Positions 3,141-62,265 of a stretch of DNA of 64,000 nt are shown piece by piece. The notes below the pieces were generated by a model, which saw only the letters and a list, made by a program, of their open reading frames with translations, was not told where the DNA came from and did not search any database. Position 1 is the stretch's first letter; the number at the start of each line of letters is the position of its first letter. The stretch is from positions 62,001-126,000 of the forward strand of contig NIVC01000576.1 in the NCBI GenBank assembly GCA_002269645.1, written 5' to 3'. The position numbers were made by a program, and so were the translations under genes. This DNA is from Macrostomum lignano. Taxonomy: Eukaryota.

Positions 3141-5533
3141 ATGAGTCGCGCAACCCTGAATCCCGAACTGCTCTGGATCGGTGCAGAATATTGCTACAGG
3201 TTAAACCCGTTAGCCGACTCTTCCCCTAGCAACAATTTGTCCAGTGTAAATCAGCCTCGTCAGCATCAAAATCTCCGACCAGTTGGTCAGCTAGAATCCG
3301 AATCTATGCCAGATAGTTGCTATGGCGACGACGCGGCTGAAGCGGCCACCTGTAGAGTCGCCGCTGCCGCTGTAAAATGCGACGAAATTGAGGAGCAACT
3401 ATCCGGCTGTCAGATTGACAGCGACAATCGGACTGGCCGCTACCGGCTGCGACTGCCGATTCCGTCGGCGTTTCACAAATTTCTAATCGGTCGTCATGGC
3501 GACGCGAAACGACGCTTAGAAGCGGAAACTGGCGTAGAGTTGATAATTCCCGAATGGGAGATACCGAGTCTCCCGTGCTGGCTCTGGGCAGGACTAAAGC
3601 TCAGCTGGCTTCGGCTAAAACTCGAATCGAATTGTTGCTAGCCGACGCGAGAGACCGGCTGCCAATTACGCATTTCTTATCCATCAGTTTGGCCGCGGAG
3701 TCGGTGAGGCATCGGTACGAGCAGTTCCGCGACAGCGCCTTGAAATGGTGCGGCGGAGATCGCGGCATTAACGATGGAGTGTTCCAGGGTGCCGCTAGGC
3801 TGCACGTGACCTGCGCTCCGCTGCTCCTGCTTACCAGCCAGGAGGTGGCCAGGGCCAAGCGGCTGCTGGACGAGTTTGGTCGGGACAGACTGCCCGAGCT
3901 GATGCGAGTGGATAGGTGCGAGATCTTGTCATTTTTAGATAGATAAGCAATATGCCATTTTTAGATAGATTAGCAATATGCCTTTTTTAGATAGATTAGC
4001 AATATGCCATTTTTAGATAGATTAGCAGTATGCCATTTTTAGATAAATTAGCGATGCCATTTTCAGATAGATTAGCAATATGTCATTTTTAGATAGATTA
4101 GCAATATGCCATTTTTCGATAGATTAGCAATATGCCATTTTAAAAGAGTGAATTTAAGCTACATCATTGACACACCTCGCATTGAAACATCCAGCGGCCC
4201 TCTAACCGTGAGCCTGAGCGGCTTAGAAATCATGAACGACGACCCGAGCGACACTAAAGTGCTCTACGCTCAGCTGTGTGAGCCCACAGGCAGACTGCAA
4301 GCTATTGCTAATGCTCTGGCTGACCAATTCCAGTCATTGGCCAGGGCCCAGCCAGGCAGGGAGGGGGTGAAACTGCACGTCACTCTGATGAATGCCAGGT
4401 GATCATTCATGCTTTATCAAAGCCCTCTGTAGCCGGCGTCGCTTCTATATAGCTGGTGTGCCCTCTGTAGCTGGCGCCCCCTCTGTAGCTGGCGTCTCCT
4501 GTGTAGCTGGCGCCCCTCTGTAGCTGGCGTCTTCTGTGTAGCTGGCGCCTCCTCTGTAGCTGGCGCCCCTCTGTAGCTGGCGTCTTCTGTGTAGCTGGCG
4601 CCCCCTCTGTAGCTGGCGTCCCCTCTGTAGCTGGCGCCCCCTCTGTAGCTGGCGCCCCTCTGTAGCTGGCGCCCCTCTGTAGCTGGCGTCCCTCTGTAGC
4701 TGGCGCCCCCTCTGTAGCTGGCGCCCCTCTGTAGCTGGCGCCCCCTCTGTAGCTGGCGCCCCCTCTGTAGCTGGCGCCAATCTGTAGCTGGCGCCAATCT
4801 GTAGCTGGCGTCTCCTGTGTAGCTGGCGCCCCCTCTGTAGCTGGCGTCTTCTGTGTAGCTGGCGCCCCCTCTGTAGCTGGCGCCCCCTCTGTAGCTGGCA
4901 CCCCCTCTGTAGCTGGCGTCTTCTGTGTAGCTGGCGCCCCCTCTGTAGCTGGCGCCCCCTCTGTAGCTGGCGTCTCCTGTGTAGCTGGCGCCCCCTCTGT
5001 AGCTGGCGTCTTCTGTGTAGCTGGCGCCCCCTCTGTAGCTGGCGCCCCCTCTGTAGCTGGCGCCCCCTCTGTAGCTGGCACCCCCTCTGTAGCTGGCACC
5101 CCCTCTGTAGCTGGCGTCCCCTCTGTAGCTGGCGCCCCCTCTGTAGCTGGCGCCCCCTCTGTAGCTGGCGCCCCCTCTGTAGCTGGCGCCCCCTCTGTAG
5201 CTGGCGTCTTCTCTGTAGCTGGCGCCCCCTCTGCAAAGAATTATGGTACAAATAGTAGGACTTAAGTGCCTTGAAGAATCCAGTTAGGATGAGTAATCAC
5301 TGTCCGTTAGCAACTAAATCCCACCATCCCCGGACAGGTACGCCGCAGACTCATCGGACAATCGTCAGAATCGATCGCTAAGTTTCGATGCCGCTCATCT
5401 GCTTAGCAAATTTTCTAATTTTGATTTCGGCAGCTGTCAGCCAGACAGTATCCAATTGTCAAAGTCCTCCTCTGGCACTTCTAAGGACTCTTACTATGCT
5501 TGCGAGCACCGGATTCCTATTTTGCCTAGCTGA
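3141..5533 (+). CDS. ASCC1: Activating signal cointegrator 1 complex subunit 1 (KH domain + 2H phosphoesterase). Exons 3141-3915, 4195-4398, 5338-5533; about 391 aa if one C is restored at about 3551
   Basis: LNPELLWIG..YRLNPL N-terminus; KH loop FLIGRHGDAKRRLEAETG; PITHFLS; two HxT motifs (RLHVTC, KLHVTLMN); LEIMNDDP..VLYA; SFDAAHLLSKFSNFDFGS. All match ASCC1 as recalled. GT-AG junctions give consistent phases. There is a 1-bp frameshift in exon 1. Confidence 0.92.
3930..4142. repeat. 26-bp minisatellite (tagatagattagcaatatgccatttt), about 8 copies, in ASCC1 intron 1
   Basis: Unit read directly. Confidence 0.93.
4423..5234. repeat. 17-20-bp minisatellite (ctgtagctggcgccccct) filling ASCC1 intron 2
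   Basis: Unit read directly. It lies between the donor at 4399 and the acceptor at 5337. Confidence 0.95.
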
Positions 5534-7901: not shown

Positions 7902-8399
7902 CCACTATACTAAAATGGGTTGTTTCTATATACTCTTATCTACTCTATAAACTGCATTCATCTTTAGCAGGGATGCCTTTACGAGTAGTTCATATTTAAT
8001 CACTTTCTTGTCGTAAAAATAATGTCCCCTTGATATATTTCTAATTTCTGAGAAATAATTGCACCAACAGCTGTTACAATCTATTTATCTATTTTTTAGC
8101 CATTGTTAATAGCTCGTATACTGGCTCTACAGCCAACTGAATAGCTACGAAGAGCTAATTAACATTTTGACGCGTATATTTGCCAAGTTGTCAAGGTGAA
8201 TGGAGAATATTGTCACTCGTGTAGGCGTGCACTCGGTTTGCTTAGTCGGGTTAGGCGCCACTCAGAAATACGTAATTGGATAAAAAACGTTTAACCCTTG
8301 TGCAGCCATGCAGCATCTACAAGGAAATCAATATCTTTTTTATCCAAACGGTTGACAGACTTTTGTTGTATTTGTAGAGGGATATCATTCCAGAGTGGA

Positions 8400-9460
8400 G
8401 GGAATCTTTTAGGTATTATCTTCTGGGAATCTTTCTAAAAGGAGAGCTAGCATTCGTGGGGCATATTTTTGAGAGGTTATAGAATCCGTAGGGGAATCTT
8501 TCCAAAAAGATTACATTTAGAACCTGTGGGGAAATTTTTCCAAAAGGATCTAGAACCCGTGGGGAATCTTTCCGAAAGGATCTAGAACCCGTGGGGAATC
8601 TTTCCGAAATTATCTATAACCCGTGGGGAATCTTTCCGAAATTATCTATAACCCGTGGGGAATCTTTCCGAAAGTATCTATAACCCGTGGGGAATCTTTC
8701 CGAAATTATCTATAACCCGTGGGGAATCTTTCCGAAATTATCTATAACCCGTGGGGAATCTTTCCGAAAGTATCTATAACCCGTGGGGCAATCTTTCCGA
8801 AAGTATCTAGAACCCGTGGGGAATCTTTCCGAAATTATCTATAACCCGTGGGGAATCTTTCCGAAAGTATCTAGAACCCGTGGGGCAATCTTTCCGAAAG
8901 TATCTAGAACCCGTGGGCAATCTTTCCGAAAGTATCTATAACCCGTGGGGAATCTTTCCAAAAGGATCTAGAACCCGTGGGGCAATCTTTCCGAAATTAT
9001 CTATAACCCGTGGGGAATCTTTCCGAAAGTATCTATAACCCGTGGGGCAATCTTTCCGAAAGTATCTAGAACCCGTGGGGAATCTTTCCGAAATTATCTA
9101 TAACCCGTGGGGAATCTTTCCGAAAGTATCTATAACCCGTGGGGCAATCTTTCCGAAAGTATCTAGAACCCGTGGGCAATCTTTCCGAAAGTATCTATAA
9201 CCCGTGGGGAATCTTTCCGAAAGTATCTAGAACCCGTGGGGCAATCTTTCCGAAAGTATCTAGAACCCGTGGGCAATCTTTCCGAAAGTATCTATAACCC
9301 GTGGGGAATCTTTCCAAAAGGATCTAGAACCCGTGGGGAATCTTTCCGAAATTATCTATAACCCGTGGGGAATCTTTCCGAAATTATCTATAACCCGTGG
9401 GGAATCTTTCCGAAAGTATCTGGAACCAGTTGGACATCTTACCTGTAGGGGAATCTTTCC
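8400..9460. repeat. 32-bp minisatellite (cccgtggggaatctttccgaaagtatctataa), about 30 copies
   Basis: Unit read directly, with degenerate units at both edges. Confidence 0.96.
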
Positions 9461-9528
9461 AACTGGTAAAAGAAGTCTGGCGAATATTTCTTGATTCTCC
9501 TCGACACCGATGTTACTTGCAGCCTTGT

Positions 9529-10996
9529 TTAATTTCTGAGGAAAATAGAACTTTTACCAACTTCGAGACTTAAGTGGCTCGGCAGCAGAGCAAAGCTGAG
9601 CGAGTAGCACTGGCCAGTTTCTGTGAAGAAGATCGCAGCCCGACAACTCCTGGGGTTGCACTTCATCAGACAGCCAAACAGATCAGCTGAGGTCGAATTC
9701 CAATAGGCGATTCCTTTGTAAGAATTGGTCACAAGGACCACTAGAAGTTACCGTTGTATCAGGACGCAACACTTGTAAATATTGCAAAATTATTTGAAGG
9801 CCCGCTTGTTTGCATTGCAGCTAAACTTTAAATGCTCATAACTCCGGACTGGTTGCACCTAGAATGATAATTTTTTCGCCAGGTTGCTCAAAATTTTGTT
9901 CTCTTTCACATGATGCAAAGTTTGGCGCTATATCTACATGTAGGAGCGGCGGGCGTACAGTAAAGTAACGGCAATACGCAATATTTCATTGCAGTCAAAA
10001 TGAATATAAAGTTTGTTTTTTCAACCATAGCCTCCTAGTCTCGATAAAGTAGCAGACCATGCTTTATATCCTGCAGTTTTGAAGCTTTATAAAGCAGATA
10101 ATCTGTACAGAGTTGAGCAGGCTGCAAAGGCGTTATACACTTCACTATCAAAAACCAGTATTATCAAAATCAAGAAAGGCGTAGTATTTTTGAATTCTTG
10201 GCACACCAGCCCAACAAGGACTCCAACATTCATAATCTTTCTTTTGCTGTTCAAATGAACAGTAGGAGTCAAATAAAACTTGTACAGTATCACCAACTTT
10301 ATTTGTATTAAAGTTCACTTTCGATATAAAAACTTCTAATTTCATAAAAATGCATGCGAAATAAGAAAACTAAGCAAAAAACTAAAAGTAAGCCTATGTA
10401 TGTATTTTAAACTTGAACTTCCATATCAATCGAGTCATTCTGTCCAAAAAATCTCTTTTAAACCCCAAAAGACTAACGCAGAGTAAAAGCAAGTGGCACA
10501 AAAGACCGGCAGACGCGGCCCAGAAAGGGAAAACGAACCCCTTAAGCGACGAAATATATTGATTTTGTAATTTAAAAGAGAAAAAAAATATTTTGCCAAA
10601 ATTACGCCGACTCAGCGGCCGCGACGCGTGACTAAATAGCACAGAGCGGGGGGAGGCTGCCCTAAGCCCTGCACGCACGCAGAGCACCAGCACCCCACCA
10701 ACCCACCAAAGCGAGGCCGGGCCGGCGCGGGGGGGTTTAAAACCAGTTAGAGTCAGATACCTGCCTCAAACTGACGTAGAAATCACAAAGCATAATGAAT
10801 CATAAGTACCGTACTTCACCATGGTAGCTCATCAGACATTGATGGATGAACATCTAGATTGGATGAATTGGCACACCTGGAATGAAACCAATGTGAGATC
10901 AATAAATATCTGCTTTGCAATGAACGACAAAATATTTGTTTCTAGTTAATTCTCTCTCTATTGCACTGATAAAAAACTAGATTAGGTTAGGTAGAG

Positions 10997-11085
<89 letters not shown>

Positions 11086-14000
11086 ATTTCCTCTTCTCCC
11101 TCTCCTGTCTCTGTTCTCATTTTTCATCTCTCCTATCATCTTTCTACTCCTCCCTCTTCTCGATCCTCTCTCCTCTCTTCTCGATTCTCTCTCCTATCTA
11201 CTCTTTCCTGTCTCATTTCTTCTCTCATATCTATCTCTCCTCTGTACTCTTTTCTTTCCCCTCTTTTGACTCCTCTCTTTCCTTTCTCTTCTCTTCTCTA
11301 CCTTCTTCTCTACTCTCCCTCTCTTTTCTCTCCACTCTCCTTTATCTCATCTCTTCTTTCATCTCTCTCATTTCTACAATCTTATCTCTTTTCTCTTCCC
11401 TTTACTTTCTCCATCTCTCCTTTCTCCTCTTTTCTCTTCCCTTTAATTTCTCCATCTCTCCTTTCTCCTTTTTTCTCTTCTCTTTTCTCTCTTCTCTACT
11501 TTTTCCTTTCTCTCTTATCTCATCTCTCTTCTTTCTCCTTCTCATCTCTTCCCTCTCCCCTTGCTTCTCTTTCCCCTATTTTTCTCTTTCCCTCCTCTCT
11601 CCTCCTCCCTCCCTCCCGCCAAAGCTAGGCCTATAGTTAGGGCAATACCTTGAGGTAAGTCTAACAATAGTATATATCCTACTATACAAAACTGTCTTAA
11701 TAAGTAAGGAAATAAATATCTTAGGCTTCAAAATATTATTGTATTAACAACAAAAGCTATAAAAACTACAAGCCATATTGCTAAATAAACAAAAAACATA
11801 TTGTCTATAATACTTACTGAGTACAGCTATATTTGTCTTCAAGTTTAGCCTAGGCTAAAATGTTTTTTTTTCTATTTGTCATGTTAATATATAGTGAAAA
11901 CATTATTCTTTTACCCTAGACTTCAGTTTTAAACATAAAACTTCAGCTTAGTAAAATAATATAGGCCTAATTAATCCAGTATAATTAATAATATAAAAAA
12001 AATTAATGGCCATTTAAGGACTACTGATTGATTAATTACTAATTAATTACTCAATTAATTAATATTATATTAATTAATTAATTAATTAATATTACTTTTA
12101 TTAATTAATTACTAATTGAAATTGTATAATATGGAATTTATAAACTTCTATATAAAACTTTCTTGCAAAAAACTAACAAGGATTCTATCCACTATATTAC
12201 ATTATGCTATACCAATCTAAACTATATAAGTATTAGAATGTTGTCCTGTAACCACTGTAAGTAATCAACTATATAGATTTAATTGTGAACTAGGCCTATT
12301 TCAAAACAGTAACAGAATCTAGAATTTTATCATGTTAGGCCTAGGCTAGTAGCAGTTAAAGTTTTAGTATGATAGGGCTATAACTTAGTCATACAGCTAA
12401 AGGCTAAGCTTATAAGCTAAAAATATTACTTTTTGTTGATAGTAAACTAGTTAGAAGCCCATCTGATCCTTTTCTCACGCTTTCGCCAATTTATATAGTA
12501 TGTCTGCTGTGGGCATAAAAACTTCAGAAATTTTAAAACGATCGAGTTGCAAAGTTGCATATAATGACATAATTACTTAAAATATCTAGATTTAACAGAT
12601 TAAAGCCTAAATAAAGTATAAATACACCTATTTATGGAGCTTCTGAGGCTCAAATATAGTGCATGCTTCTTTAAAACAGTCAAGTAGAATACTTTTTTGA
12701 AGGCAAGTACCGATAAATACACGTAAACAAGCGGGCCTTCAAACAATCCCGCAATATTTACGAGTGTTGCGTCCTGATACAACGGTAACTTCTAGTGGTC
12801 CTTGATTGGTCACCGTGAGCTGGGGCAGGCCGGTATGCGTCTGGCGAAAAGATGCAGACGATGATGGACAGCTCGCACCTTGTGGACGAGTTAGAGGCAC
12901 AGCAACTTGCATTCATAAGCATTGAGGCTTTAGAAACAAATTAATCAATCTTGACATGTAGGTAGAACCTATTAAATATCACTTAAAGATAGATTCATTG
13001 AACAACTCGATACACCATCAAAAATATTCCTAAATCCCACCAATCAATCATAAACTAATCAGTTAATCAACGATCAAAGCTGATTTATAGATCCCATCAA
13101 CCATCAATCAATCAAACATCAAAGCTGATTAATAGATCATTAAGTCAGTAAGCTTATCATCTATACGGGGCTACCAGAATTACCTTCGATGTCATCGCCA
13201 GCAGCTTCAGTCTGACTGTTTAATCTGTACACAGAGTTTCGCCAAGCTCCGCCACAGATCTGGCTGGCATTGCCTGGGCAAGCCGCACTGCACTGCGCCT
13301 CGGTATCCGCAGCTCCATGCAATCCGTAGCCCGATCCGCAGAAGCATTCTTCTGTCGATTGCATAGAGAAATATTTGAATCCCAATCCTGCCACAGCTCC
13401 AATTGAGCAGATTCTGTAGCACAGCTCAGTGGTCATTGCTGCGGGCCCTAGTTGACAATCTTACAAACTGACTTGTCAGATCTGATTTCTCTTGAATAGT
13501 CTTATTAAATCTTCTCAGATCTGTTCAAAAAATGTAAGTGACAGATAAAAATCTATGATTAGTATGTTTTGTATGCAAACAATATTTTCCTGCTTTAAAG
13601 GTCGAAAAAGCTTTTATAATGTGATAATTTAATTCACTAATTCACAGTTTAGTTGATCTAACAGATTTCGCAAGGTGATGCAAGTTGCGATTGCATATGT
13701 ATCGAAGGGAAAATTTACAATAGGTAAAAGGAGTACTGCACAGCAGAATTGTATTACATATAAAATTTCAGCATGATGTGTTTCATTTTTACAGTTTAGT
13801 AATCTTAAACTGATATTCCTATGTACATATACATATGTAGTCATTTTTACACTGTCGTAAAATATTTGCTAAATGTATAAGAAACTATAAAAACGTATTT
13901 GTACACTTAAGTAATATATAATAGTTGTATTTACTCATCTAAATGGGCAAATGGGCAAGTTTATAAATAAAAAATGTGCCCTGTTTGTTTTAACTATGTT

Positions 14001-16439
14001 TTCTTTTAAATAAGCTTCTGCTGTAATTTACTCGTAGATCGATTTATCGGATATTCATCTAGGGTTACAAATTTACCAACGCGTCTGCTAATTTGTAGGC
14101 CTAAGCCTATGAAAAGTTTTTTGCTACTTTCTATTTTAATTTTTCAGTAAATACTTTATTTGCAATGCAAGTGACAAGAGCAGCCATTAATGGCCCGAGT
14201 CCAGGAAATGAAGCTAAAGTCTTTGTGTCTTTGTACTGCATTCTGTGCTGTGGTAGCAGTACTAAGAATTTTTTACAAATCTTCAAGCTAACAGACACTC
14301 GATTTTCATCATGTTCTTTAGAAGCACGCCTGCGTTGAGATTTTGTAAGTATGGAGCTTTACATTGTTAATTAGAGAAAAAATGATGATAAGCATTGGCC
14401 TAGCCCTAGCCTAGGCCTACCTAGCCTAAGCCAAGCCCTAGGCACATGACGAAGATGGCCACAGCTCTAAATATCTAAATAGATCATAGGCCTAGGTCTA
14501 TATATTTCCTCATTTCCTATTATTAGTATAATGGAGATAAGTAAGGGAGATAAATACTAGGGCATATACATATAAAATGGAATTAGATTAGGCCTAACCA
14601 AACAAAAACTTGAAAAAACAATTTTGTATTGTGAATAAAGTCTAAAAATCTATTATTGCATGATATTTATATATTCAATTATAATTGAACTTAATAATTT
14701 ATATAACGATAGCACTAGGGGGGGGGGCTAAGTTATGAATTAATATTAAAAAGTTGATAATATAGAGATTAAAAAATTCTATGCTGTAGCCATCTTGGAC
14801 TTGGTTTTACACCTTACATGTATCACTAAGCCATGTTGCCCTTCCATTGTCATTCTATCCTAGTTTTGTTTTGACATTGTTTTTCTAATTTTGACCTAGA
14901 CCTTATTTTTTAAAAAGTATTTGGGCTAAAAATATAGCAGTGAAGTATAATTTGCATATTTAAGAACATTAAGGCAAAACCTTTATGCTTTTTAATCATT
15001 GGGACAGATATTTTAAACCAAATGTGTAGTGTATGAAGGCATTGTCCAGTGTCCAAGCCATTAATTCTTTTATACCCGCAGCCACAGAGCCAACAAATCT
15101 GCTGTCAAGTTTGATTGATATGGTAAATCATCAGATTTTAGAAAGAAGCAAACAAATGCCTTAAAGAAATCATGCAAAATATTGATTTCAACCTACCTGC
15201 AACTTGAGTAAGTATTGTGCATATTTCTTTGAAAAGTACTAGTGTATTTCATTATCATTATTTCAATTATTGTATATGTATATTCCACTTTATTTTTATT
15301 TCAAGATGCTTTTCGGGCTGGCTACGCTATGGACAGACACTGGAGAGCTACTTGGCTGTTGCTCAACCAAGCATCTAGATATTGTGCCAAGACAAGTGTC
15401 AGCAGGCTAATCTGCCAATGGCCGCAGTAGATGTCACTATGAATGGTGCTTGACTTGGTGTGTCAGTTTTTATAAAATTCTTCTTTAACTTTAAAGTTTC
15501 GGATTTGTTTGTTTTTTATGTAATGCACTTAAAACACAAAATTAAAAAAGTAAGGTAAAAAATTACAGTTGCTTTTAACTTTTTGATTGATTAATTAACT
15601 AATTGCAGGTAAAACTTGAAGGAATTTTAAAAGTTTCCTTCATAAAGACGTCAATTAAAACAATTTTTGCTGTTGGTTTTAGTGCTAAATAGTTAAATAG
15701 AAGTACTGGTATAATAGTGAGTTAAACATCTTTTAATTGTTATTAAATTGTTATGCAGTGCTTAAAAGACCTTGCTTTTTGGTTTAGTTGTGACTGCATT
15801 TGCAGATGAATTTTGTTTGCATGTTTCTTTGTGCCAATAAATCCTAAATAAATTGCCAAAGTTGATTTTTTGTTTTCTAATGCCTACAGTCTGTCTTGAA
15901 TATAATAAAATGACAAAAATAAATGTTTTTTCTAATAAATCTAACCTTATATTAAATTATTAATTGCTGTACATAAACACAAATATAAAGCTTTTTAAGC
16001 AATTAATTGTTTATATTCTTTTTCCTTTTATTAATATTCGAGAATCAGAGAACCAAAAATGGTGACCATTGAATTCTGCATGGATAAACATATGCAAAAT
16101 TTCCTGCAATTTCTTGCCAGATCTTACCCAACTCTTGTCAAATCTTACAGGATACCTTAAGTAAGATCTTATAATTTCTTTGGAATTATTGAAGGAATTG
16201 GTAAGTCAGATCTTGTAAGATTTGGCAAGTCATTGTCAACTAGGGGGGTCTTTGACTGCGCCAAAACTTTTCACAGCATACGGACCCAGCCGGGAAATTC
16301 CAACAAGGCCGTCTAGATCTCGCTTGGACGTGTCGACATAGCAACCAACGTAGGTGTAGGTAAGATTGTCATCTACGCATTGAACAGTGTTTACGGCAAG
16401 AATTTCTGCTATTAGAAGCAGCTTCATCAGAGCTAGCAT
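9529..16439 (-). CDS. Secreted WSC-domain protein with a C-terminal PAN/apple-like module. Exons 16439-16241, 13447-13184, and 12878-12805 + 9723-9529 (exon 3 is interrupted by a transposon); 243 aa without the insertion
   Basis: Hydrophobic N-terminus MLALMKLLLIAEILAVNTVQC. WSC motifs YVGCYVD..RDL, MTTELC..IC, ECFCG, CPGNASQICGGAWRNSVY. Exon 2 ends in donor AG|GTAATT, phase-matched to an acceptor with a CTAAC branch site at 12879. Cys spacing C..F...GCLMKC..SCRAAIF...GQCY is PAN-like. Exon lengths sum to 732 nt. An alternative is a stop at 13161 (161 aa, WSC only). Confidence 0.72.
9732..12804. mobile_element. Non-autonomous TIR DNA transposon (P- or hAT-type), 3073 bp, 80-bp TIRs, 8-bp TSD ATTGGTCA
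   Basis: TIRs at 9732-9811 and 12725-12804 (caaggaccactagaagttacc...) match at 75/80. The identical TSD is at 9724-9731 and 12805-12812. No transposase ORF was seen. Confidence 0.92.
10996..11620. repeat. (CT)n microsatellite and pyrimidine-rich low-complexity tract inside the TIR element
   Basis: Pure CT run to about 11083, then CT-rich degenerate sequence. Confidence 0.95.
13446..16245. mobile_element. Putative non-autonomous TIR element coinciding with intron 1 (13448-16240) of the WSC gene
   Basis: Perfect 14-bp terminal inverted repeat ccctagttgacaat / attgtcaactaggg, extended imperfectly to about 43 bp (agatctga at the same offset). Subterminal TCTTAC/GTAAGA repeats. The TSD is ambiguous within G runs. 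Confidence 0.7.
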
Positions 16440-17112: not shown

Positions 17113-20100
17113 ATGTCGTCGAAACCGCAGACTCCGGCTCCCGATGGCGAGGAGGCGGACCAGACGGCGGCGGCCGCTGAAGCAGCAGCAGAAGGCGATG
17201 AGGCGCCGCCGTCCCGCGCCTCCGGCCGTTCCAAGAAGAGCCAGAGCCAGGCCGCAGGTTCCACGCGACAGCAGACAGAGGCCAACGAAGACGCTGACGA
17301 GGCCGACGCGGTGGCTGGCGATGCTGAGGACGCCGCAGGAGGCGATCCAGATGCCGCCGCCGAAGACGAGGACCTGCCGGAGCAGGAGGTTCAAGAGGAC
17401 CCGGCACTGGACCGGCGCAACATCCGCAAAATCATCGCGGAGGATCCGGAGTGGAACCTGGCCACGGTGCCGGGACTGGCCGAGCTCAGTCTCAAAGGTC
17501 TCGTAGCCAATTTTGAGTACAACTCAGACGTGCTCAACCGAGTCGACCCTGCTCAACAGGCTAAGCTGCTGAAGCGGCTGCCAGTTGACGTGTCAAAGAA
17601 GGTCACCGGGCCGCTGATTCGTGACGAAGGCTATTGGCGTCGCGTGTGCAAAGCGCGGTGGCCCGTGTGCGACGTCAGCCAGTACGACGGAAGCTGGAAG
17701 CGGATGCACTTTGAGCGCGATTTGCAGGTAGTTTTCTAATACCCTTTTAACTTTCTCAATTTTTAATGACTAGAGAAAAACTAGAGCCTGTTGAGTAGTT
17801 GACATTAAAGAGTATTCATTTTAAATCGTTTTTTAAAAAATAGTTTTAATTTCGTTTTACGCATATCATACTTAAAGTTGCTATATAATTATAATTTACT
17901 ACAGTTTATTTTTAATTTAATCTAGGGGAAATGTTAACAAATTTTCTACCTAAAAACTGTAGTAGAGTCTGGGGGATGCTTGCTATCTGGGGGATGCTTG
18001 CTATCTGGGGGATGCTTGCTATCTGGGGGATGCTTGCTATCTGGGGGATGCTTGCTATCTGGGGGATGCTTGCTATCTGGGGATGCTTGCTATCTGGGGG
18101 ATGCTTGCTATCTGGGGGATGCTTGCTATCTGGGGGATGCTTGCTATCTGGGGGATGCTTGCTATCTGGGGGATGCTTGCTATCTGGGGGATGCTTGCTA
18201 TCTGCATGGGGGATGCTTGCTATCTGGGGGATGCTTGCTATCTGGGGGATGCTTGCTATCTGGGGGATGCTTGCTATCTGGGGGATGCTTGCTATCTGGG
18301 GGATGCTTGCTATCTGGGGGATGCTTGCTATCTGCATGGGGGATGCTTGCTATCTGGGGGATGCTTGCTATCGGGGGATGCTTGCCATCTGGGGGTTGCT
18401 TGCTATCTGGGGGATCTGGGGGATGCTTGCTATCTGCAGGGTGCTTGCTATCGGGGGATGCTTGCTATCTGGGGGTTGCTTGCTATCGGGGGGATGCTTG
18501 TTATCTGGGGGATCTGGGGGATGCTTGCTATCTGGGGGTTGCTTGCTATCGGGGGATGCTTGTTATCTGGGGGATCTGGGGATGCTTGCTATCTGGGGGA
18601 TGCTTGCTATCTGGGGGTTGCTTGCTATCGGGGGGATGCTTGCTATCTGGGGGATCTGGGGGATGCTTGCTATCTGCAGGGTGCTTGCTATCGTGGGGAT
18701 GCTTGCTATCTGGGGGATGCTTGCTATCTGCAGGGTGCTTGCTATCTGGGGGATGCTTGCTATCTGGGGGATGCTTGTTATCTGGGGGATGCTTGCTATC
18801 TGCAGGGTGCTTGCTATCGGGGGATGCTTGCTATCTGGGGGATGCTTGCTATCTGGGGGATGCTTGTTATCTGGGGGATGCTTGCTATCTGCAGGGTGCT
18901 TGCTATCGGGGGGATGCTTGCCATCTGGGGGTTGCTTGCTATCTGGGGGATCTGGGGGATGCTTGCTATCTGCAGGGTGCTTGCTATCGGGGGATGCTTG
19001 CTATCTGCATGGGGATGCTTGCTATCTGCATGGGGGATGCTTGCTATCTGGGGGATGCTTGCTATCTGGGGGATGCTTGCTATCTGGGGGATGCTTGCTA
19101 TCTGCATGGGGGATGCTTGCTATCTGGGGGATGCTTGCTATCTGGGGGATGCTTGCTATCTGGGGGATGCTTGCTATCTGGGGGATGCTTGTTATCTGGG
19201 GGATGCTTGCTATCTGCATGGGGGATGCTTGCTATCTGCATGGGGGATGCTTGCTATCTGCATGGGGGATGCTTGCTATCTGCAGGGTGCTTGCTATCGG
19301 GGGATGCTTGCCATCTGGGGGTTGCTTGCTATCTGGGGGATCTGGGGGATGCTTGCTATCTGCAGGGTGCTTGCTATCGGGGGATGCTTGCTATCTGCAT
19401 GGGGGATGCTTGCTATCTGGGGGATGCTTGCTATCTGGGGGATGCTTGCTATCTGGGGGATGCTTGCTATCTGGGGGATGCTTGCTATCTGCATGGGGGA
19501 TGCTTGCTATCTGGGGGATGCTTGCTATCTGGGGATGCTTGCTATCTGGGGGATGCTTGCTATCTGGGGGATGCTTGCTATCTGGGGGATGCTTGCTATC
19601 TGGGGGATGCTTGCTATCTGGGGGATGCTTGCTATCTGGGGGATGCTTGCTATCTGGGGATGCTTGCTATCTGGGGGATGCTTGCTATCTGGGGGATGCT
19701 TGCTATCTGGGGGATGCTTGCTATCTGCAGGGTGCTTGCTATCGGGGGATGCTTGCTATCTGGGGGATGCTTGCTATCTGGGGATGCTTGCTATCTGGGG
19801 GATGCTTGCTATCTGCAGGGTGCTTGCTATCGGGGGATGCTTGCTATCTGGGGGATGCTTGCTATCTGGGGGATGCTTGCTATCTGGGGGATGCTTGCTA
19901 TCTGGGGGATGCTTGCTATCTGGGGGATGCTTGCTATCTGGGGGATGCTTGCTATCTGGGGGATGCTTGCTATCTGGGGGATGCTTGCTATCTGGGGGAT
20001 TCTTGTTATCTGGGGGATGCTTGTTATCTGCAGGGTGCTTGCTATCGGGGGGATGCTTGCTATCTGCAGGGTGCTTGCTATCTGGGGGATGCTTGCTATC

Positions 20101-23100
20101 TGGGGGATGCTTGCTATCTGGGGGATGCTTGCTATCTGGGGATGCTTGTTATCTGGGGATGCTTGCTATCTGCAGGGTGCTTGCTATCGGGGGATGCTTG
20201 CTATCTGGGGGATGCTTGCTATCTGGGGGATCTGGGGATGCTTGCTATCTGCAGGGTGCTTGCTATCGGGGGATGCTTGCTATCTGCATGGGGGATGCTT
20301 GCTATCTGGGGGATGCTTGCTATCTGGGGGATGCTTGCTATCTGGGGGATGCTTGCTATCTGCATGGGGGATGCTTGCTATCTGGGGATGCTTGCTATCT
20401 GGGGATGCTTGCTATCTGGGGATGCTTGCTATCTGGGGGATGCTTGTTATCTGGGGATGCTTGCTATCTGCATGGGGGATGCTTGCTATCTGCATGGGGG
20501 ATGCTTGCTATCTGCATGGGGGATGCTTGCTATCTGCAGGGTGCTTGCTATCGGGGGATGCTTGCCATCTGGGGGTTGCTTGCTATCTGGGGGATCTGGG
20601 GGATGCTTGCTATCTGCAGGGTGCTTGCTATCGGGGGGATGCTTGCCATCTGGGGGTTGCTTGCTATCTGGGGATCTGGGGGATGCTTGCTATCTGCAGG
20701 GTGCTTGCTATCGGGGGATGCTTGCTATCTGGGGGTTGCTTGCTATCGGGGGATGCTTGCTATCTGGGGGATGCTTGCCATCTGGGGGTTGCTTGCTATC
20801 GGGGGATGCTTGCTATCTGGGGGTTGCTTGCTATCTGGGGGATGCTTGCTATCTGGGGGATGCTTGCTATCTGGGGGATGCTTGCTATCTGGGGGATGCT
20901 TGCTATCTGGGGATGCTTGCTATCTGGGGGATGCTTGCTATCTGCAGGGTGCTTGCTATCGGGGGATGCTTGCTATCTGGGGGATGCTTGCTATCTGGGG
21001 GATGCTTGCTATCTGGGGGATGCTTGCTATCTGCAGGGTGCTTGCTATCGGGGGGATGCTTGCTATCTGGGGGATGCTTGCTATCTGGGGGATGCTTGCT
21101 ATCTGGGGGATGCTTGCTATCTGGGGGATGCTTGCTATCTGGGGGATGCTTGCTATCTGGGGATGCTTGCTATCTGGGGATGCTTGCTATCTGGGGGATG
21201 CTTGCTATCTGGGGGATTCTTGTTATCTGGGGGATGCTTGTTATCTGCAGGGTGCTTGCTATCGGGGGGATGCTTGCTATCTGCAGGGTGCTTGCTATCT
21301 GGGGGATGCTTGCTATCTGGGGGATGCTTGCTATCTGGGGGATGCTTGCTATCTGGGGGATGCTTGTTATCTGGGGGATGCTTGCTATCTGCAGGGTGCT
21401 TGCTATCGGGGGGATGCTTGCTATCTGGGGGATGCTTGCTATCTGGGGGATGCTTGCTATCTGCAGGGTGCTTGCTATCTGGGGGATGCTTGCTATCTGG
21501 GGGATGCTTGCTATCTGGGGGATGCTTGTTATCTGGGGGATGCTTGCTATCTGCAGGGTGCTTGCTATCGGGGGATGCTTGCCATCTGGGGTTGCTTGCT
21601 ATCTGGGGGATCTGGGGGATGCTTGCTATCTGCAGGGTGCTTGCTATCGGGGGATGCTTGCTATCTGGGGGTTGCTTGCTATCGGGGGATGCTTGCTATC
21701 TGGGGGATGCTTGCTATCGGGGGTTGCTTGCTATCTGGGGGATGCTTGCTATCTGGGGGTTGCTTGCTATCTGGGGAATGCTTGCTATCTGGGGTTGCTT
21801 GCTATCGGGGGATGCTTGCTATCTGGGGGATGCTTGCTATCTGGGGATGCTTGCTATCTGGGGGATGCTTGCTATCTGGGGATGCTTGCTATCTGGGGGT
21901 TGCTTGCTATCTGGGGGATGCTTGCTATCTGGGGGATGCTTGCTATCTGGGGGATGCTTGCTATCTGGGGGATGCTTGTTATCTGGGGGATGCTTGCTAT
22001 CTGCAGGGTGCTTGCTATCGGGGGATGCTTGCCATCTGGGGGTTGCTTGCTATCTGGGGGATCTGGGGATGCTTGCTATCTGCAGGGTGCTTGCTATCGG
22101 GGGATGCTTGCTATCTGGGGGTTGCTTGCTATCGGGGGATGCTTGCTATCTGGGGGATGCTTGCTATCGGGGGGTTGCTTGCTATCTGGGGGATGCTTGC
22201 TATCTGGGGGTTGCTTGCTATCTGGGGAATGCTTGCTATCTGGGGGTTGCTTGCTATCGGGGGGATGCTTGCTATCTGGGGGATGCTTGCTATCTGGGGG
22301 ATGCTTGCTATCTGGGGGATGCTTGCTATCTGGGGGATGCTTGCTATCTGGGGGATGCTTGCTATCTGGGGGATGCTTGCTATCTGGGGGATGCTTGCTA
22401 TCTGGGGGATGCTTGCTATCTGGGGGTTGCTTGCTATCTGGGGGATGCTTGCTATCTGGGGGATGTTCTGTTTTTAGAGGGAATGTCTGTTGTTTTTTAA
22501 TGAAGGCTTTATTTCGCTGTCTATTTGTTATTTCTAAATAACAAGGATTCTATCCAGAAGTCCCTCATCGGGGGGCGAAGATTGCTAGTTTTCTACCTAA
22601 AAACTAAAAACACCGATTAATCCTAATAATCTTAATAGAAATGATTTTTTAAATAAAATTTGTTTATAAATAAAACGCAATAAAAATCTACGAACTCGTA
22701 TTGCGCAATATTGTTATAAACAATAATAAAAAGAATATCTATAAAAATTAATACCAACAAAAAAGTGAATTAAAAATACAATATAGTCATACCTACGAGT
22801 ATATCAGGAATTAATTTTTTTTCAATTTCATGTAATACAGTAATTGCTATGATTTTATTTCCACTTTTTCATTTCATTTTTATTTGATGCCTAAGCATAG
22901 AATTGAAACCACTGGAATTTAAATTGATTTATATTAACTTTTTTCTGCTCCAAGTTGACAGCAGAATCCAAATTGAAAAGAAGCATTTAAACAAATCACA
23001 ATATTGCCAATTCCACAGGAAGTGATCGAATTCTTCGTGCCGGGCAGCACGGACCCAACTCAGCTCAGCGAGTCGCTCATCCTGGCCGGCCCGTTCGTCC

Positions 23101-23990
23101 GCCGGCTCGTCATCAACCAGCTGCTGCCGCCGGTCGCCGACGACACCGCCGGTCAGGGCGACGACGCCGGCAGCGACCACGGCTCTGACGCGGAGAACGA
23201 GCTGGACAACAGCCACCTGGACTTCGGACCGCTGCTTCCACATCTGCCGAACCTCACGGAGCTGCGACTCTGCTACACCGTCCGCGACTGCGGCATGAAC
23301 TTCGAATGGAGCCTCTTCAACTTCACCGCCAAAGACTGCCTGAAACTCGCCGAAGCTGTGGCCGCTTGTCGTCAGCTGCGAGTGTTGCAGCTCAGCCGCA
23401 GCAAAGTGGACTGCGACCGGTGCCGCATCCTCATCAGCCGGCTGCTGGACCATCCGGGACTGGAGGAGCTGGACCTGTCGCACAACAGCATCGGAGATCG
23501 GGGGGCCCGTGCGCTCGGCAAATTCTTGAATGGCCACAGCAAGCTGGTCCGCTTGGATGTCACGGACAATCTGGTGCGAGCTCAGGGCGCCCAGGCTCTC
23601 GCCCACGCGCTGCTCAAGAACCGCACTCTGCGACAGCTCAGCCTCCGCCTCAACCGGATGGGCGACGATGGCGGCCAGGCCATCGGCAAGGCGCTGATCC
23701 GCAACGACATCCTGGAAGACGTCGACATCTCCAGCAACGAGTTGACAGAGCCGACGGCAACCGTGCTGGCTCAGGTGATCGTCCAGAACAAGACGCTGCA
23801 ACGGCTGAACCTGTGCAACAACCGCCTGGGTGCTGACGGCGGCAAGCAGCTGCAGGAGGGCATGGAGCGGAACCACACCTTGCTGGAGATGGACCTGCGC
23901 TTCACCGAGTGCGGCCAGGAGTCTGAGTACCGCATCTCCCAGGTGCTGGAGAAGAACCAGGAGAGGAGGGAGAAACGACAGAACAAGTAG
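17113..23990 (+). CDS. TCTE1: Dynein regulatory complex subunit 5 (T-complex-associated testis-expressed protein 1), LRR protein. Exons 17113-17727 and 23019-23990; 528 aa
   Basis: Diagnostic segments IIAEDPEWNLATVP, WPVCDVSQYDGSWKRMHFER, VRDCGMNFEWSLF, LDLSHNSIGDRGARA, NELTEPTA, DGGKQLQEGM, QESEY match TCTE1/DRC5 as recalled. Phase-0 GT-AG intron. Confidence 0.96.
17968..22465. repeat. 17/18-bp G-rich minisatellite (gggggatgcttgctatct), about 4.5 kb, in the TCTE1 intron
   Basis: Unit read directly, with variants ctgcagggtg and ctgcatgggg. Confidence 0.98.
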
Positions 23991-33818: not shown

Positions 33819-34437
33819 AAGTGTAAATGCCTAACGATAAATAAAGTCAGGGCCGCTGTGCACTCCTGTGTGAGTGTGTGCCTGTGCGTGTGACTGCGTA
33901 CGTATCCGTGAGCTTGTGTGCCTGCTCAGGGGAGTCGGCGGAATGGGCAGTAATGCCTCTCGCCGGTTGTGTGACAATGTCGCTTAAAGTGCGCCGCCAG
34001 GTGCACACAGCTACTGCATCTGATAATGAAAATAAACATAGATATGGCAAATGACTCACAAATAGTTAAAACTATAATGAGATCATACTATCACTAATGA
34101 CACTTTTGTAGCTAATTGTAATAAGATAAAATGACTTATTTTCTGTGGCTAACAGTTTAATGAGATCAGAAAATCACTAATGACTCATTTCTGTAGCTAA
34201 AAGTGTAATGAGCTCACAAAATCACTAATGACTCATTTATGTAGCTAAAAGTGTGTAATGAGCTCATAAAATCACTAATGACTCATTTCTGAAGCTAAAA
34301 GTGTTTAATGAGCTCATAAAATCACTAATGACTCATTTCTGTAGCTAAAAGTGTGTAATGAGCTCATAAAATCACTAATGCATCATTTCTGTAGCTAAAA
34401 GTGTAATGAGCTCATATAGAATCACTAATGACTCATG
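33819..34437 (+). mobile_element. SINE-like element copy 2, 5'-truncated, with an expanded 48-50-bp tandem tail
   Basis: Colinear with copy 1 from about 6965 onwards; about 7 tail units. Confidence 0.8.
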
Positions 34438-57071: not shown

Positions 57072-57470
57072 GGACGACATCGAGGCTGCGATTTTGTGCC
57101 GATGCGCTGATGGACAGGCGACAGAGCTTCCGCCTTGTCAGCAGTTCGTCTACCTCGGCGGTCTGGTTCCCGGCGTCCGCGAGGATCTGCGGCGTCGCCG
57201 CGGGCTTGCATGGGCTGCCTTTCGTTCTGTGAGGGCTGCAGTCCTGAAGTCCGAGGCCTTACCTGACCGCCAGAGGGCGGCGTTGTTCCAGGCGGTGATT
57301 GAGACAGTCCTGCTGTACAACGTCGAGACCTGGACGCTGACGGAGTCGCTCGAGCAACAAGTTGACGCGGCGCACGCTGGCCTGCTGCGCGCCGCCTTCA
57401 AGATCGGCTACGAGGGAGTGACCTACGAGGCTTTGTATCACCGCACTGGCCTGAGGCGTCTCATTTTTTT
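57072..57470 (+). mobile_element. RTE-like non-LTR retrotransposon fragment (region C-terminal to the RT core)
   Basis: FVYLGG..EDLRRRRGLAWAAF..AVIETVLLYNVETWTL is typical of the post-RT region of RTE-clade LINEs. It is homologous to 62903-63240. Confidence 0.8.
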
Positions 57471-58766
57471 CTGCAAAAGACGGACAGACTCTGTTCATCC
57501 AACAATCATCAGCCAGTATGAAAAAAGCAAGAAGTGTCGTCACCAACAAAAGTTCAAGCTGGTATCACGGCGTCAGAGGTTGCTAGGGCCCCCTCTTTTG
57601 GTAAAGTGCATCATACAGCTGTCGCAATGCCGCTGCTGACCAAAAAAGCAATCGTGACAGGCGTCTGCAACGTGCAAAGCCCTCAAGATGAACTTCGATC
57701 AAGGTGATCCTGTTTACAGACGAGCCACGCTGGATGGCTCCTAGAGCCATTTCCTGACTGAGTGCGTCATAACAAAGAGGCGGTAGCATCATGACCTGGA
57801 AGGCATCATTGAAAGCACTGTTGTGGGGCTGTTCCTACATGAAGTTCCTGATGGGTAAATATCAAATCGGCGTGGAGACGATCTTCGTTTATTGCTTGCG
57901 TCAGGTGTAAAAAGGTATGCATTCCAGAGCAAGCGAATCCTCATCCACGATAATCATTAGTGTTTTCATTACGTTCGAACGCGTTTGAGCTCACCACAAG
58001 AGATTCGTTTTTCACTTTTGCCTCAAAGAAATGAACATTAGACGGAGGATCCGTAAGGTAACTTCTTCACAAAATCACAGCATTTTTTAAATCGCAGTTC
58101 CCGTCTGTAACTTACCAATGTCAATATCACTATTGCCTCCACTGCCCCTGTCCCTGATACTGTTACCTCTACTGCTCAATCGCCCGTTTGCTGTCCCTTC
58201 CGGAGCTCAGTATATTGTCACTCTCCGTGTCAGAGCCACTGCCACTGCTACCGATATTGACAAATCTTATTCACACTCACTACGACGTACGTAATTTCTT
58301 CGATTGCCGTCACAGTCAGTCACAGTTTCTACTGCTGTCAACGCCGCCACTTTCACTGTCACTGTTTACTGTCGCCATCGCAGTCACTTAAACAAAAGTT
58401 ACTGTCAGAACCTCTGTCTCTGTAACATGTCTTGCAATCGTCCAAATCACGCCGCTGAAAGCCTTCTACGCATGGAAAAAAGTAGAAATCAATTCAAAAT
58501 AAAATACTTTGACTTACTCAAACTCTAAAAGCGCTAGCGATACGGTTTCAATCAGAACAAAACACAACGCATAATTTACAAAGCAGTTGTTTTGGCTTCA
58601 ATTTACTGACACAAGATGTGTTTCCTTGATTGGCCTCCTCGATTACCCGGAGCACAATCATTGGCTCCTTAGTCAATAATAAATATTTACAATACAGTAT
58701 TGGCTTTAATTTAACGCATTTAGAAAATATTTCTGAGTTGGTTCTGATTTATTAGCAGATATTACA

Positions 58767-61540: not shown

Positions 61541-62265
61541 TTTTCAAGACAGTTGAATGCAAGAATGTACTATTCAGCTTAGGTGTCAAGGAGTTCTGCC
61601 CGACAGAATAGCGAGTGCGTTCATATTTGCAATGCTAACAGCTTTATTTATTACATTGACAATAATATCTTTAACGGAATTCTCCAAGGAATTCTGCTAA
61701 GTAAAATGTACGCGGCTCTAGTTTTTACTTCACTGCTCAGAGCTCCTCATTGAGAGGTCGAGCATTTTTTGGAAATTTCCATAAAGGAAAGTATATCGAA
61801 ATTCGACAGCTCAAGCGGTCTCTTATCAATGCAGCTATTGATCGTTTAAAAAAATTCATTGACACATGAAATTGAAATGGTGGGGCACAGTTACCGATCT
61901 TTTCCCTTATCTTTCTATCTGACAGCTAAACTAATTCATTCCGAATTCGTGGTAGCAACCAATTTCATTCTGCCTTTTTTACTAGTATACATGCTCATAA
62001 TAGCTTATTTAAGCCTTTTTTCTCAAGTGCTCGTGAATTATGCATACTGATCGTTAGGGAATTTTTTTGTTTTAATCGCTAAACAGAAAATTTAATCACA
62101 TTTTGAACTTCTGAAGCCGTGTTTTTAAAGACTCCAAACTTTTCTCCGAAGTTTGATCCTTGTATGGTGGCTGGGTGGGTCTTACAATTTTAATGTGGAT
62201 CTTAATTCGGTTTCGAAGAAGCCGGGCACCACAAGGCTAAAGAGCATCAAGGCATCTATCTGTCT

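What the first reader, a model, noticed from the sequence alone, without database searches (positions are those of the whole stretch)
9724..12878. Second TIR element in the same gene interrupts exon 3 yet carries in-frame cryptic splice sites
Seen in sequence: an 80-bp-TIR element with TSD ATTGGTCA splits an otherwise continuous frame (..LPQLTVTN|SYKGIAYW..). Read-through stops about 21 codons into the element. The distal TIR has a phase-1 acceptor (gtaacttcTAG|tg gtc ctt gtg acc aat) 9 nt from the end. The proximal TIR has a phase-1 donor (act c|GTAAAT at 12761). Using both adds 60 nt (20 aa) in frame, and the phase-1 donor of exon 2 could also splice straight to this acceptor in frame. Inference: one gene may show two stages of transposon-to-intron conversion. 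The CAAGG terminus with an 8-bp TSD fits both P (CANRG) and hAT (YARNG) conventions, and 80-bp TIRs are long for hAT.
Basis: partly seen in the sequence, partly recalled or inferred. Interest (0 to 1): 0.72.

Follow-up and report, generated by a model that had tools for sequence, protein, structure and literature searches.

The report
Transposon insertion disrupting a duplicated flatworm gene
A 3-kb non-coding cut-and-paste DNA transposon sits in a coding exon of one of three near-identical copies of a small secreted-protein gene in the flatworm Macrostomum lignano; a sister copy keeps the untouched insertion site, and nothing beyond chance suggests the element is turning into an intron.

Summary
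The sequence observation is correct. Window 9732-12804 is a 3,073-bp element with 80-nt terminal inverted repeats (75/80 identical) and a perfect 8-bp target-site duplication, ATTGGTCA. It splits the reading frame LPQLTVTN|SYKGIAYW.

The window is Macrostomum lignano assembly Mlig_3_7, contig NIVC01000576.1. The assembly holds two more copies of this locus. One (L003) carries the gene intact, with the exact empty site and a single ATTGGTCA. The gene's "intron 1" is also absent from both sister copies, so it is a second transposon insertion into a coding exon, not an older converted intron. The third copy has lost the C-terminal exon by deletion.

The element has no transposase and no other copy in about 124 kb of available M. 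lignano DNA. Its superfamily (hAT or P) stays undecided.

The proposed splice sites exist as strings and do add 60 nt in frame. They are weak: both lack the exonic AG found at all five local donors. They lie inside an 80-bp RNA duplex formed by the repeats. In 61% of composition-matched shuffles at least one such in-frame pair appears.

Best reading: a recent disabling insertion in a redundant gene copy. Splicing rescue is untested and unlikely.

The parts
9724..9731 (.). Target-site duplication, copy 1 (ATTGGTCA)
   Evidence: Identical 8-mer on both sides of the element. The sister locus L003 has a single copy at the empty site.
9732..9811 (.). Terminal inverted repeat, distal arm relative to the minus-strand host gene. 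Terminus 5'-CAAGGACCACTAG...
   Evidence: 80 nt, 75/80 identical to the other arm.
9812..12724 (.). Non-coding body of the element. It contains a (CT)n tract and about 600 bp of CT-rich low-complexity sequence (about 10990-11620), AT-rich TTAATTAA palindromes (about 12020-12120) and a short GC-rich island (about 10600-10740).
   Evidence: Sequence read. There are no long open frames except low-complexity ones. Pfam finds no domain. No Rfam family or tRNA.
12725..12804 (.). Terminal inverted repeat, proximal arm relative to the host gene
12805..12812 (.). Target-site duplication, copy 2 (ATTGGTCA)
12805..12905 (-). Host gene, 5' part of the interrupted C-terminal exon (...GASCPSSSASFRQTHTGLPQLTVTN). 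The acceptor is at 12905 or 12878.
   Evidence: The same exon is uninterrupted in L003.
9529..9723 (-). Host gene, 3' part of the interrupted exon (SYKGIAYW...IFLRN, stop)
13184..13442 (-). Host gene, second half of the WSC-domain exon. It ends at the phase-1 donor GAAG|GTAATT.
   Evidence: WSC domain, E=5.8e-13.
16248..16439 (-). Host gene, start codon, signal-peptide-like N-terminus and first half of the WSC-domain exon
13446..16244 (.). About 2.8 kb, 13-14-nt inverted termini CC(C)TAGTTGACAAT, probable 3-bp duplication CCC (13443-13445 and 16245-16247). Boundaries are uncertain by 1 nt in a homopolymer.
   Evidence: Absent from L003 and L004, which read GTCAAAGACTCCGCAGCAATG without interruption. 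Termini read.

Best explanation
Window 9732-12804 is a non-autonomous class II (cut-and-paste) DNA transposon. A transposase supplied in trans made an 8-bp staggered cut at ATTGGTCA in a coding exon and inserted the element. The host is a small gene for a putative secreted protein with a signal peptide, a WSC domain and a Cys-rich domain that is weakly PAN/Apple-like. The organism is Macrostomum lignano (Mlig_3_7 contig NIVC01000576.1, record positions 71,732-74,804).

The locus exists in three copies that are 97-98.6% identical in this partly duplicated genome, and the insertion is specific to this copy. It breaks the reading frame, with a stop 21 codons into the element. Together with a second, unrelated transposon insertion in the first exon, it most likely makes this copy a null allele or young pseudogene. 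This is tolerated because an intact copy (L003) exists. The GT and AG dinucleotides in the terminal repeats are incidental.

Shown: the insertion, the empty site, the target-site duplication, the lack of coding capacity and the loss of frame. Inferred: mobilisation in trans, loss of function, and absence of productive splicing.
For: **Structure of the element**
- Terminal repeats and target-site duplication.
- No transposase: no non-repetitive open frame longer than 123 aa, and no Pfam hit among the six longest of them submitted.

**Organism and contig**
- The neighbouring DRC5 gene is 100% identical to M. lignano PAA80519.
- The fetched contig is 100% identical to the window over 26,878 bp.

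**Sister copies**
- The exact empty site, with one ATTGGTCA, is present in L003 (NIVC01002775.1). The adjacent flank is 98.8% identical.
- The L003 gene is an uninterrupted 249-codon reading frame.
- The third copy (L004) has lost window 7905-13008, including the C-terminal exon. Two of the three copies are therefore damaged in different ways.
- The copies differ by 1.5-3%.
- CDS comparison of the window copy with L003: dS 0.04, dN/dS 0.54, and no lesions other than the two insertions.

**Paralogue comparison**
- The spacing F..(24-25 aa)..SxADxxxC is the same in the distant paralogue P0001 as in the empty-site protein. The 20 extra residues would be a departure from it.

**Splice sites**
- The proposed sites are weak and consistent with chance.
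- All five real local donors have AG at positions -2 and -1, whereas the proposed donor has TC.
- Both proposed sites are paired inside an 80-bp RNA duplex with a free energy of -140 kcal/mol.

**Genome redundancy**
- Wudarski et al. 2017 (PMC5730564) report 180 Mb of the assembly in duplicated blocks at least 95% identical.
Against: - No RNA data could be consulted, so splicing of the element is not excluded.
- Apart from the two insertions the window copy has no stop or frameshift, and dN/dS is 0.54 rather than 1. However, only 19 substitutions separate the copies, and the insertions may be very young.
- Each insertion could in principle be removed by a GT..AG pair near its ends so that the frame is kept (+9 nt and +60 nt).
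- No second copy of the element was found, so membership of a mobile family rests on its structure alone.
Confidence: 0.8

Rival explanations
1. Nascent transposon-derived intron. Most of the element is spliced out using the donor in the proximal repeat (12761) and the acceptor in the distal repeat (9740). This would give an in-frame mRNA with 20 extra residues. The other insertion would be removed likewise (+3 residues), so the copy would still make protein.
For: - The arithmetic holds: +60 nt with no stop, and +9 nt for the other element.
- Precedents exist. From my own knowledge, maize Ds and dSpm elements are spliced from exons via sites in their ends (Wessler and colleagues). Aureococcus Introners with an 8-bp duplication add 12 nt in frame (PMC9860276).
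- The exons show no other lesion.
Against: - The donor CTC|GTAAAT scores -1.7 bits and lacks the exonic AG present at all five local donors. It ranks 32nd of 155 GTs, and the acceptor ranks 73rd of 335 AGs.
- For the other element the only usable donor, CTA|GTTGAC, scores -8.8 bits. Both weak events would be needed for a full-length protein.
- An in-frame pair is expected in 61% of shuffles.
- Both sites are buried in an 80-bp duplex.
- The element carries two AATAAA and two ATTAAA on the sense strand.
- The 20 residues would fall inside the Cys-rich domain, whose spacing is conserved in a paralogue.
- The element is 3 kb, whereas median Introner family lengths are 30-654 nt.
Confidence: 0.07
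2. Exon-truncating splice or gene trap. The conserved phase-1 donor at 13184 splices directly to the acceptor at 9740, or to a stronger acceptor inside the element. The 5' half of the C-terminal exon is skipped, giving a shortened or chimeric protein.
For: Several AG sites deeper in the element score better than 9740.
Against: - The product would lack the first cysteine and about 33 residues of the C-terminal domain.
- The upstream insertion already introduces a stop in exon 1.
- There is no transcript evidence.
Confidence: 0.04
3. The element is ancestral and the sister copies lost it by precise excision; or the insertion is an assembly artefact of the PacBio-based contig.
For: - The assembly does show homopolymer indels nearby: a frame break in ASCC1 at about window 3550 and one in the paralogue on L002.
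- Cut-and-paste elements can excise.
Against: - L003 has a footprint-free site with exactly one copy of the 8-mer. Excision by hAT or P elements usually leaves footprints (my own knowledge).
- The distant paralogue has the uninterrupted spacing.
- A chimeric join would not create an 80-nt inverted repeat flanked by a perfect 8-bp duplication of the target.
Confidence: 0.03

Closest known systems
Non-autonomous hAT elements (for example maize Ds, animal hAT-N families)
   Same: 8-bp target-site duplication. The terminal pentanucleotide CAAGG fits the (C/T)A(A/G)NG consensus described for hAT ends (my own knowledge). The interior is non-coding and unrelated to any transposase. Insertion into an exon, with splice-like sites near the ends, recalls Ds alleles of maize waxy and adh1.
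   Different: The 80-nt terminal repeats are several times longer than typical hAT repeats (about 10-25 nt). The single target matches the nTnnnnAn preference at only one of the two positions, whichever strand is read. No hAT transposase partner was found.
P-element superfamily (non-autonomous derivatives)
   Same: 8-bp target-site duplication, repeats of tens of nucleotides, and internally deleted or non-coding derivatives that depend on a transposase supplied in trans.
   Different: No THAP or P-type transposase partner was identified. There is no sequence similarity to any known P end that I could test.
Introners / transposon-derived introns (Micromonas, Aureococcus, dinoflagellates and others; PMC9860276, PMC11282704)
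   Same: A DNA element with terminal repeats and a target-site duplication, located inside coding sequence. One Aureococcus family has an 8-bp duplication, carries both splice sites and adds codons in frame.
   Different: Introners are multi-copy families of short, efficiently spliced introns in many genes (median lengths 30-654 nt, 5 to over 2,000 copies). This is a single 3-kb copy with weak sites and no evidence of splicing, in one of three gene copies.

Membership tests
Class II cut-and-paste transposon with terminal inverted repeats (non-autonomous) | Terminal inverted repeats | tested here: met
   80 nt, 75/80 identical.
Class II cut-and-paste transposon with terminal inverted repeats (non-autonomous) | Target-site duplication, with a matching empty site elsewhere | tested here: met
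   Perfect 8-bp duplication. The empty site, with a single copy, is present in sister locus L003.
Class II cut-and-paste transposon with terminal inverted repeats (non-autonomous) | No transposase gene of its own | tested here: met
   Six-frame translation, ORF list and Pfam scan.
Class II cut-and-paste transposon with terminal inverted repeats (non-autonomous) | Further copies in the genome, including an autonomous partner that shares the ends | not testable with these tools
   No copy in the window, L002, L003 or L004, about 124 kb in total. None in JGI metagenomes. Peptide search found nothing. The whole M. lignano genome cannot be searched here.
hAT superfamily | 8-bp target-site duplication | tested here: met
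hAT superfamily | Terminus (C/T)A(A/G)NG | tested here: met
   CAAGG at both ends. The consensus itself is taken from my own knowledge.
hAT superfamily | Short terminal repeats (about 10-25 nt) | tested here: not met
   80 nt.
hAT superfamily | Transposase with BED finger, DDE core and hAT dimerisation domain | not testable with these tools
   No partner element is available.
P superfamily | 7-9-bp target-site duplication and terminal repeats of tens of nucleotides | tested here: met
P superfamily | THAP-domain P-type transposase partner | not testable with these tools
   No partner element is available.
Introner / transposon-derived intron | Removed from mRNA by the spliceosome | not testable with these tools
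   No transcript data. No protein from this gene, intact or disrupted, is present in the 15-billion-protein collection.
Introner / transposon-derived intron | Functional splice sites carried by the element or co-opted from the duplication | tested here: inconclusive
   The GT and AG strings are present and in frame. They are weak, chance-level and inside a duplex.
Introner / transposon-derived intron | Many near-identical copies serving as introns of unrelated genes; short length | tested here: not met
   A single copy in the DNA available. Its 3,073 bp compares with family medians of 30-654 nt (PMC9860276).
MITE | Miniature size (well under 1 kb) | tested here: not met
   3,073 bp.

The most novel reading that the evidence does not exclude
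Two unrelated DNA transposons landed in coding exons of the same flatworm gene copy: one with an 8-bp duplication (hAT- or P-like) and one with a probable 3-bp duplication and CC(C)TAG termini. Under this reading both are removed from the pre-mRNA through GT..AG pairs in their terminal repeats, perhaps helped by pairing of the repeats bringing the ends together. That would leave +3 and +20 residues. It would be intron birth from ordinary, non-specialised transposons caught in progress in an animal, with the intron-less state preserved in sister copies of the same genome.
Probability: 0.05. Interest if true: 0.7.

Novelty: new member of a known kind. Interest (0 to 1): 0.2.

Why it matters
Taken at face value, this is an ordinary event: a transposon knocks out a redundant gene copy in a repeat-rich, partly duplicated genome.

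Its modest value is as a clean example. The filled site, the exact empty site and a third copy damaged by deletion all sit in one assembly. Together they show how duplicated genes decay after the chromosome duplication in M. lignano. The example also defines the ends and target of an uncatalogued DNA transposon family that was recently mobile in a transgenesis model organism.

If transcripts showed in-frame removal of the element, it would become a rare animal case of intron gain from a transposon, with the ancestral state at hand.

Tried and rejected
**Searches for further copies or a partner element (all negative)**
- BLASTN of both elements against the window, L002, L003 and L004 found only self hits.
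- An exact scan of JGI metagenome contigs for the terminal 25-mer found nothing.
- An exact look-up of 10 ORFs from the element and the host exons found none in the protein collection.
- A homology search with the 63-aa ORF that reads inward from the repeat found no candidates.

**Searches for a function inside the element (all negative)**
- Pfam on its non-repetitive ORFs, Rfam and tRNA scan gave nothing significant.

**Evidence of expression**
- A protein search with the conceptual host protein found only a 49%-identical paralogue and one metagenome protein. Neither the intact nor the disrupted copy is in any gene set. Wudarski et al. 2017 removed transcripts overlapping repeats from the GenBank annotation, so this absence says little.

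**Attempts that failed**
- I tried to derive a larger species-specific intron set by solving exon chains for the annotated neighbour genes. It failed because the gene ranges include UTRs. I used five introns read by eye instead.

**Ideas rejected**
- 'Intron 1' as an old, converted transposon intron: the sister copies and the paralogue have no intron there.
- Assembly chimera: ruled out by the repeat-plus-duplication structure.
- Classification as MITE, Introner or foldback element: ruled out by size and structure.
Full report
**1. The observation**

- The repeat finder reports inverted arms at 9732-9811 and 12725-12804, 80 nt and 94% complementary, separated by 2,913 nt.
- Base by base, 75 of 80 positions match and the first 42 are perfect. 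The octamer ATTGGTCA flanks the element at 9724-9731 and 12805-12812.
- The terminal 25-mer occurs nowhere else in the window, against 0 expected.
- The host gene lies on the minus strand. Removing the element and one octamer restores ...LPQLTVTN|SYKGIAYW... in one open frame that runs to a stop at 9529.
- Read-through into the element ends after 21 codons (ORF 12739-12912).

**2. Where the window comes from**

- The neighbouring plus-strand gene (17113-23990) is DRC5/TCTE1. It is 100% identical to Macrostomum lignano PAA80519 (BOX15_Mlig013721g2).
- The contig encoding that protein, NIVC01000576.1 of assembly GCA_002269645.1 (Mlig_3_7), is 100% identical to window 7113-33990. Window position 1 therefore equals record position 62,001.
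- GenBank annotates no gene between 7113 and 17112.
- Wudarski et al. 2017 state that transcripts overlapping repeat annotations were dropped from the submitted annotation. They also report 180 Mb of the assembly in duplicated blocks at least 95% identical, as expected from the extra large chromosomes of line DV1 (PMC5730564).

**3. Sister copies and the empty site**

The cluster of the DRC5 protein contains two further M. lignano genes, g1 and g3. Their contigs could be fetched with 10-kb flanks as L003 (NIVC01002775.1) and L004 (NIVC01000064.1).
- **L003.** It aligns with the window on both sides of the element and skips it. Window 9078-9732 matches L003 7482-8152, and window 12805-13138 matches L003 8144-8477 at 98.8% identity. 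The 9-nt overlap is the single octamer plus one chance-matching base. On the gene strand L003 reads ACGGTGACCAAT|TCTTACAAAGG, exactly the predicted empty site.
L003 also lacks window 13445-16244. Both L003 and L004 read GTCAAAGACTCCGCAGCAATGACC (VKDSAAMT) without interruption.
- **The intact gene.** The L003 gene has two exons and 249 codons: a signal-peptide-like N-terminus, a WSC domain (Pfam E=5.8e-13) and a Cys-rich C-terminal part with only weak PAN_1 similarity (E=0.08, below threshold).
- **L004.** It has lost the equivalent of window 7905-13008, which includes the whole C-terminal exon.
- **Divergence.** Over shared unique DNA the copies are 97.0% (window-L003), 97.5% (window-L004) and 98.6% (L003-L004) identical.
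- **Distant paralogue.** A paralogue on L002 (P0001, 49% identical) has the WSC domain in a single exon. Its only intron is the phase-1 intron between the two domains.

The ancestral gene therefore had one intron, and the window copy acquired two insertions into coding sequence.

**4. State of the window copy**

With both insertions removed in silico, the window CDS differs from L003 by 7 synonymous and 12 non-synonymous changes (dS 0.040, dN/dS 0.54). It has no stop or frameshift. The insertions are thus the only disabling lesions. They are younger than the roughly 3-4% divergence of the copies. With 19 substitutions, the dN/dS value cannot separate weak constraint from recent relaxation.

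**5. Anatomy and class of the element**

- **Interior.** The interior (9812-12724) is non-coding. It holds a (CT)n tract followed by about 600 bp of CT-rich low-complexity sequence, AT-rich TTAATTAA palindromes and a short GC-rich island.
- **Coding capacity.** No non-repetitive open frame exceeds 123 aa. The six longest of them, which I submitted to Pfam, gave no hit. There is no Rfam family or tRNA.
- **Class.** It is therefore a non-autonomous cut-and-paste element.
- **Superfamily.** The 8-bp duplication restricts the choice mainly to hAT and P (my own knowledge of superfamily hallmarks). CAAGG fits the hAT terminal consensus, but 80-nt repeats are atypically long for hAT. The one available target matches the hAT nTnnnnAn preference at only one of its two positions.
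- **Other copies.** No other copy and no partner could be found in the roughly 124 kb of M. lignano DNA available here, in metagenomes, or by peptide search. The superfamily stays open.

**6. Are the 'in-frame cryptic splice sites' meaningful?**

The strings are there and the arithmetic is right. Splicing 12762^9740 adds 43 + 9 + 8 = 60 nt and yields ...TVTNQGPLEVTVVSGRNTLVLVTNSYKG... without a stop. Four results argue against significance.
- **(a) Weak sites.** I scored donors with a generic metazoan donor matrix, using frequencies from my own knowledge, so the scores are approximate. The proposed donor CTC|GTAAAT scores -1.7 bits and ranks 32nd of 155 GTs (counted in the element plus 100 nt of upstream exon). 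By a crude pyrimidine-tract score the acceptor ranks 73rd of 335 AGs.
- **(b) Local donors.** Five real M. lignano donors read in these loci all have AG at positions -2 and -1: CAG|GTAGTT, AAG|GTAATT, TAG|GTGCGA, CAG|GTGATC and CAG|GCAAGT. The four GT donors score +1.9 to +4.4 bits (one computed, the other three worked out by hand with the same matrix). The proposed donor has TC at -2 and -1.
- **(c) Chance expectation.** In 5,000 shuffles of the terminal 100 nt that keep composition and repeat symmetry, 61% give at least one in-frame, stop-free GT..AG pair. The mean is 2.8 pairs and the real element has one.
- **(d) RNA duplex.** In the sense transcript the two repeats form an 80-bp duplex with a free energy of -140 kcal/mol, with one unpaired position. 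Both proposed sites lie inside it. That this would hinder recognition is my inference.

The sense strand of the element also carries two AATAAA and two ATTAAA motifs.

For the other insertion the frame hits TGA two codons in. The only frame-saving donor, CTA|GTTGAC, scores -8.8 bits. A full-length protein from this copy would need both weak events.

**7. Expression**

No transcript data are reachable with these tools. The conceptual protein finds only the 49% paralogue and one metagenome protein among 5.8 billion clusters. None of ten exact ORFs is on record. Even the intact L003 copy is unannotated. Because of the annotation filter mentioned above, this is only absence of evidence.

**8. Most likely mechanism**

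A transposase supplied in trans inserted this non-autonomous element at ATTGGTCA in one of three paralogous copies. The insertion, together with a second and unrelated one, truncates the protein. The copy is a null allele or young pseudogene, sheltered by the intact L003 copy. The independent deletion in L004 shows the same relaxed fate. I put about 0.8 on this reading.

Rivals:
- Productive in-frame splicing: 0.07.
- Exon-truncating or gene-trap splicing: 0.04.
- Ancestral element with precise loss, or an assembly artefact: 0.03. The footprint-free single octamer in L003, the paralogue spacing and the repeat-plus-duplication structure all speak against this.

**9. Comparison with known systems**

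- In mechanism it resembles Ds-like or P-like non-autonomous elements.
- The idea that such elements can behave as introns is old for maize Ds and dSpm (my own knowledge).
- It is well documented for Introners. One Aureococcus family has an 8-bp duplication and adds 12 nt in frame (PMC9860276; review PMC11282704).
- This element fails the Introner criteria that could be tested, namely copy number in the DNA at hand and length. The decisive criterion, splicing, is untestable here.

**10. Verdict**

The transposon call is right. The 'transposon-to-intron conversion in two stages' reading is not supported. The element is a new, unclassified member of a known kind, and interest is low (0.2).

Noticed in passing
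It has 13-14-nt inverted termini CC(C)TAGTTGACAAT, subterminal repeats of the type GTAAGATYTGRCAAG and a probable 3-bp target duplication, which would be CACTA/CMC-like. It is absent from L003, L004 and the paralogue. A 1-nt ambiguity in a C/G homopolymer prevents exact boundaries.
   Followed up: partly
L004 8619/8620 (equivalent to window 7905-13008): The third copy of the locus has a deletion of about 5.1 kb that removes the 32-bp minisatellite, the C-terminal exon and part of the intron. Only the WSC exon remains.
   Followed up: partly
window 3540-3560: The ASCC1-like gene (KH plus AKAP7 2'5'-ligase-like domains) changes frame at a CCC run (..LIIP / RMGDTESPV..). This is either a homopolymer indel error of the PacBio-based assembly or a real frameshift in this copy.
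   Followed up: no
L002 1820-1835 and 2131-2209: The WSC paralogue P0001 has a 1-nt frame break near its start (GGCTGCTTGCAGAC), which explains why its annotation is 'partial'. Its single intron is a GC-AG intron (CAG|GCAAGT...TTTCAG).
   Followed up: no
window 33819-33995 and 44274-44446: A long inverted repeat, about 180 nt in two adjacent blocks at 92-93% identity, brackets 10.3 kb that contains several gene-like ORFs. It could be a large element or an inverted segmental duplication.
   Followed up: no
window 8700-9470; 13058-13138; 17931-22541; L003 8450-8790: Minisatellites surround the gene: a 32-bp array just downstream of its stop codon, a 4.6-kb array filling the single DRC5 intron, and a 45-bp unit in the host intron present twice in the window but about eight times in L003.
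   Followed up: no
window 9774-9792 versus 12744-12762 (repeat positions 43, 55-57, 61): All five mismatches between the terminal repeats are transitions. Four of them become G-U pairs in the sense-strand RNA, so the transcript duplex has only one unpaired position. There are too few events to interpret.
   Followed up: no
window 4150-4160, 12878-12905, 22990-23016: Local acceptors often end in AAG or CAG with little pyrimidine tract (TTTAAG|C, GCAAG|T, CACAAG|G). M. lignano acceptor requirements may be loose, which limits what a generic acceptor score can say.
   Followed up: no
window 57094-57639: An ORF that looks like the C-terminal part of a non-LTR reverse transcriptase, probably a LINE fragment.
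   Followed up: no
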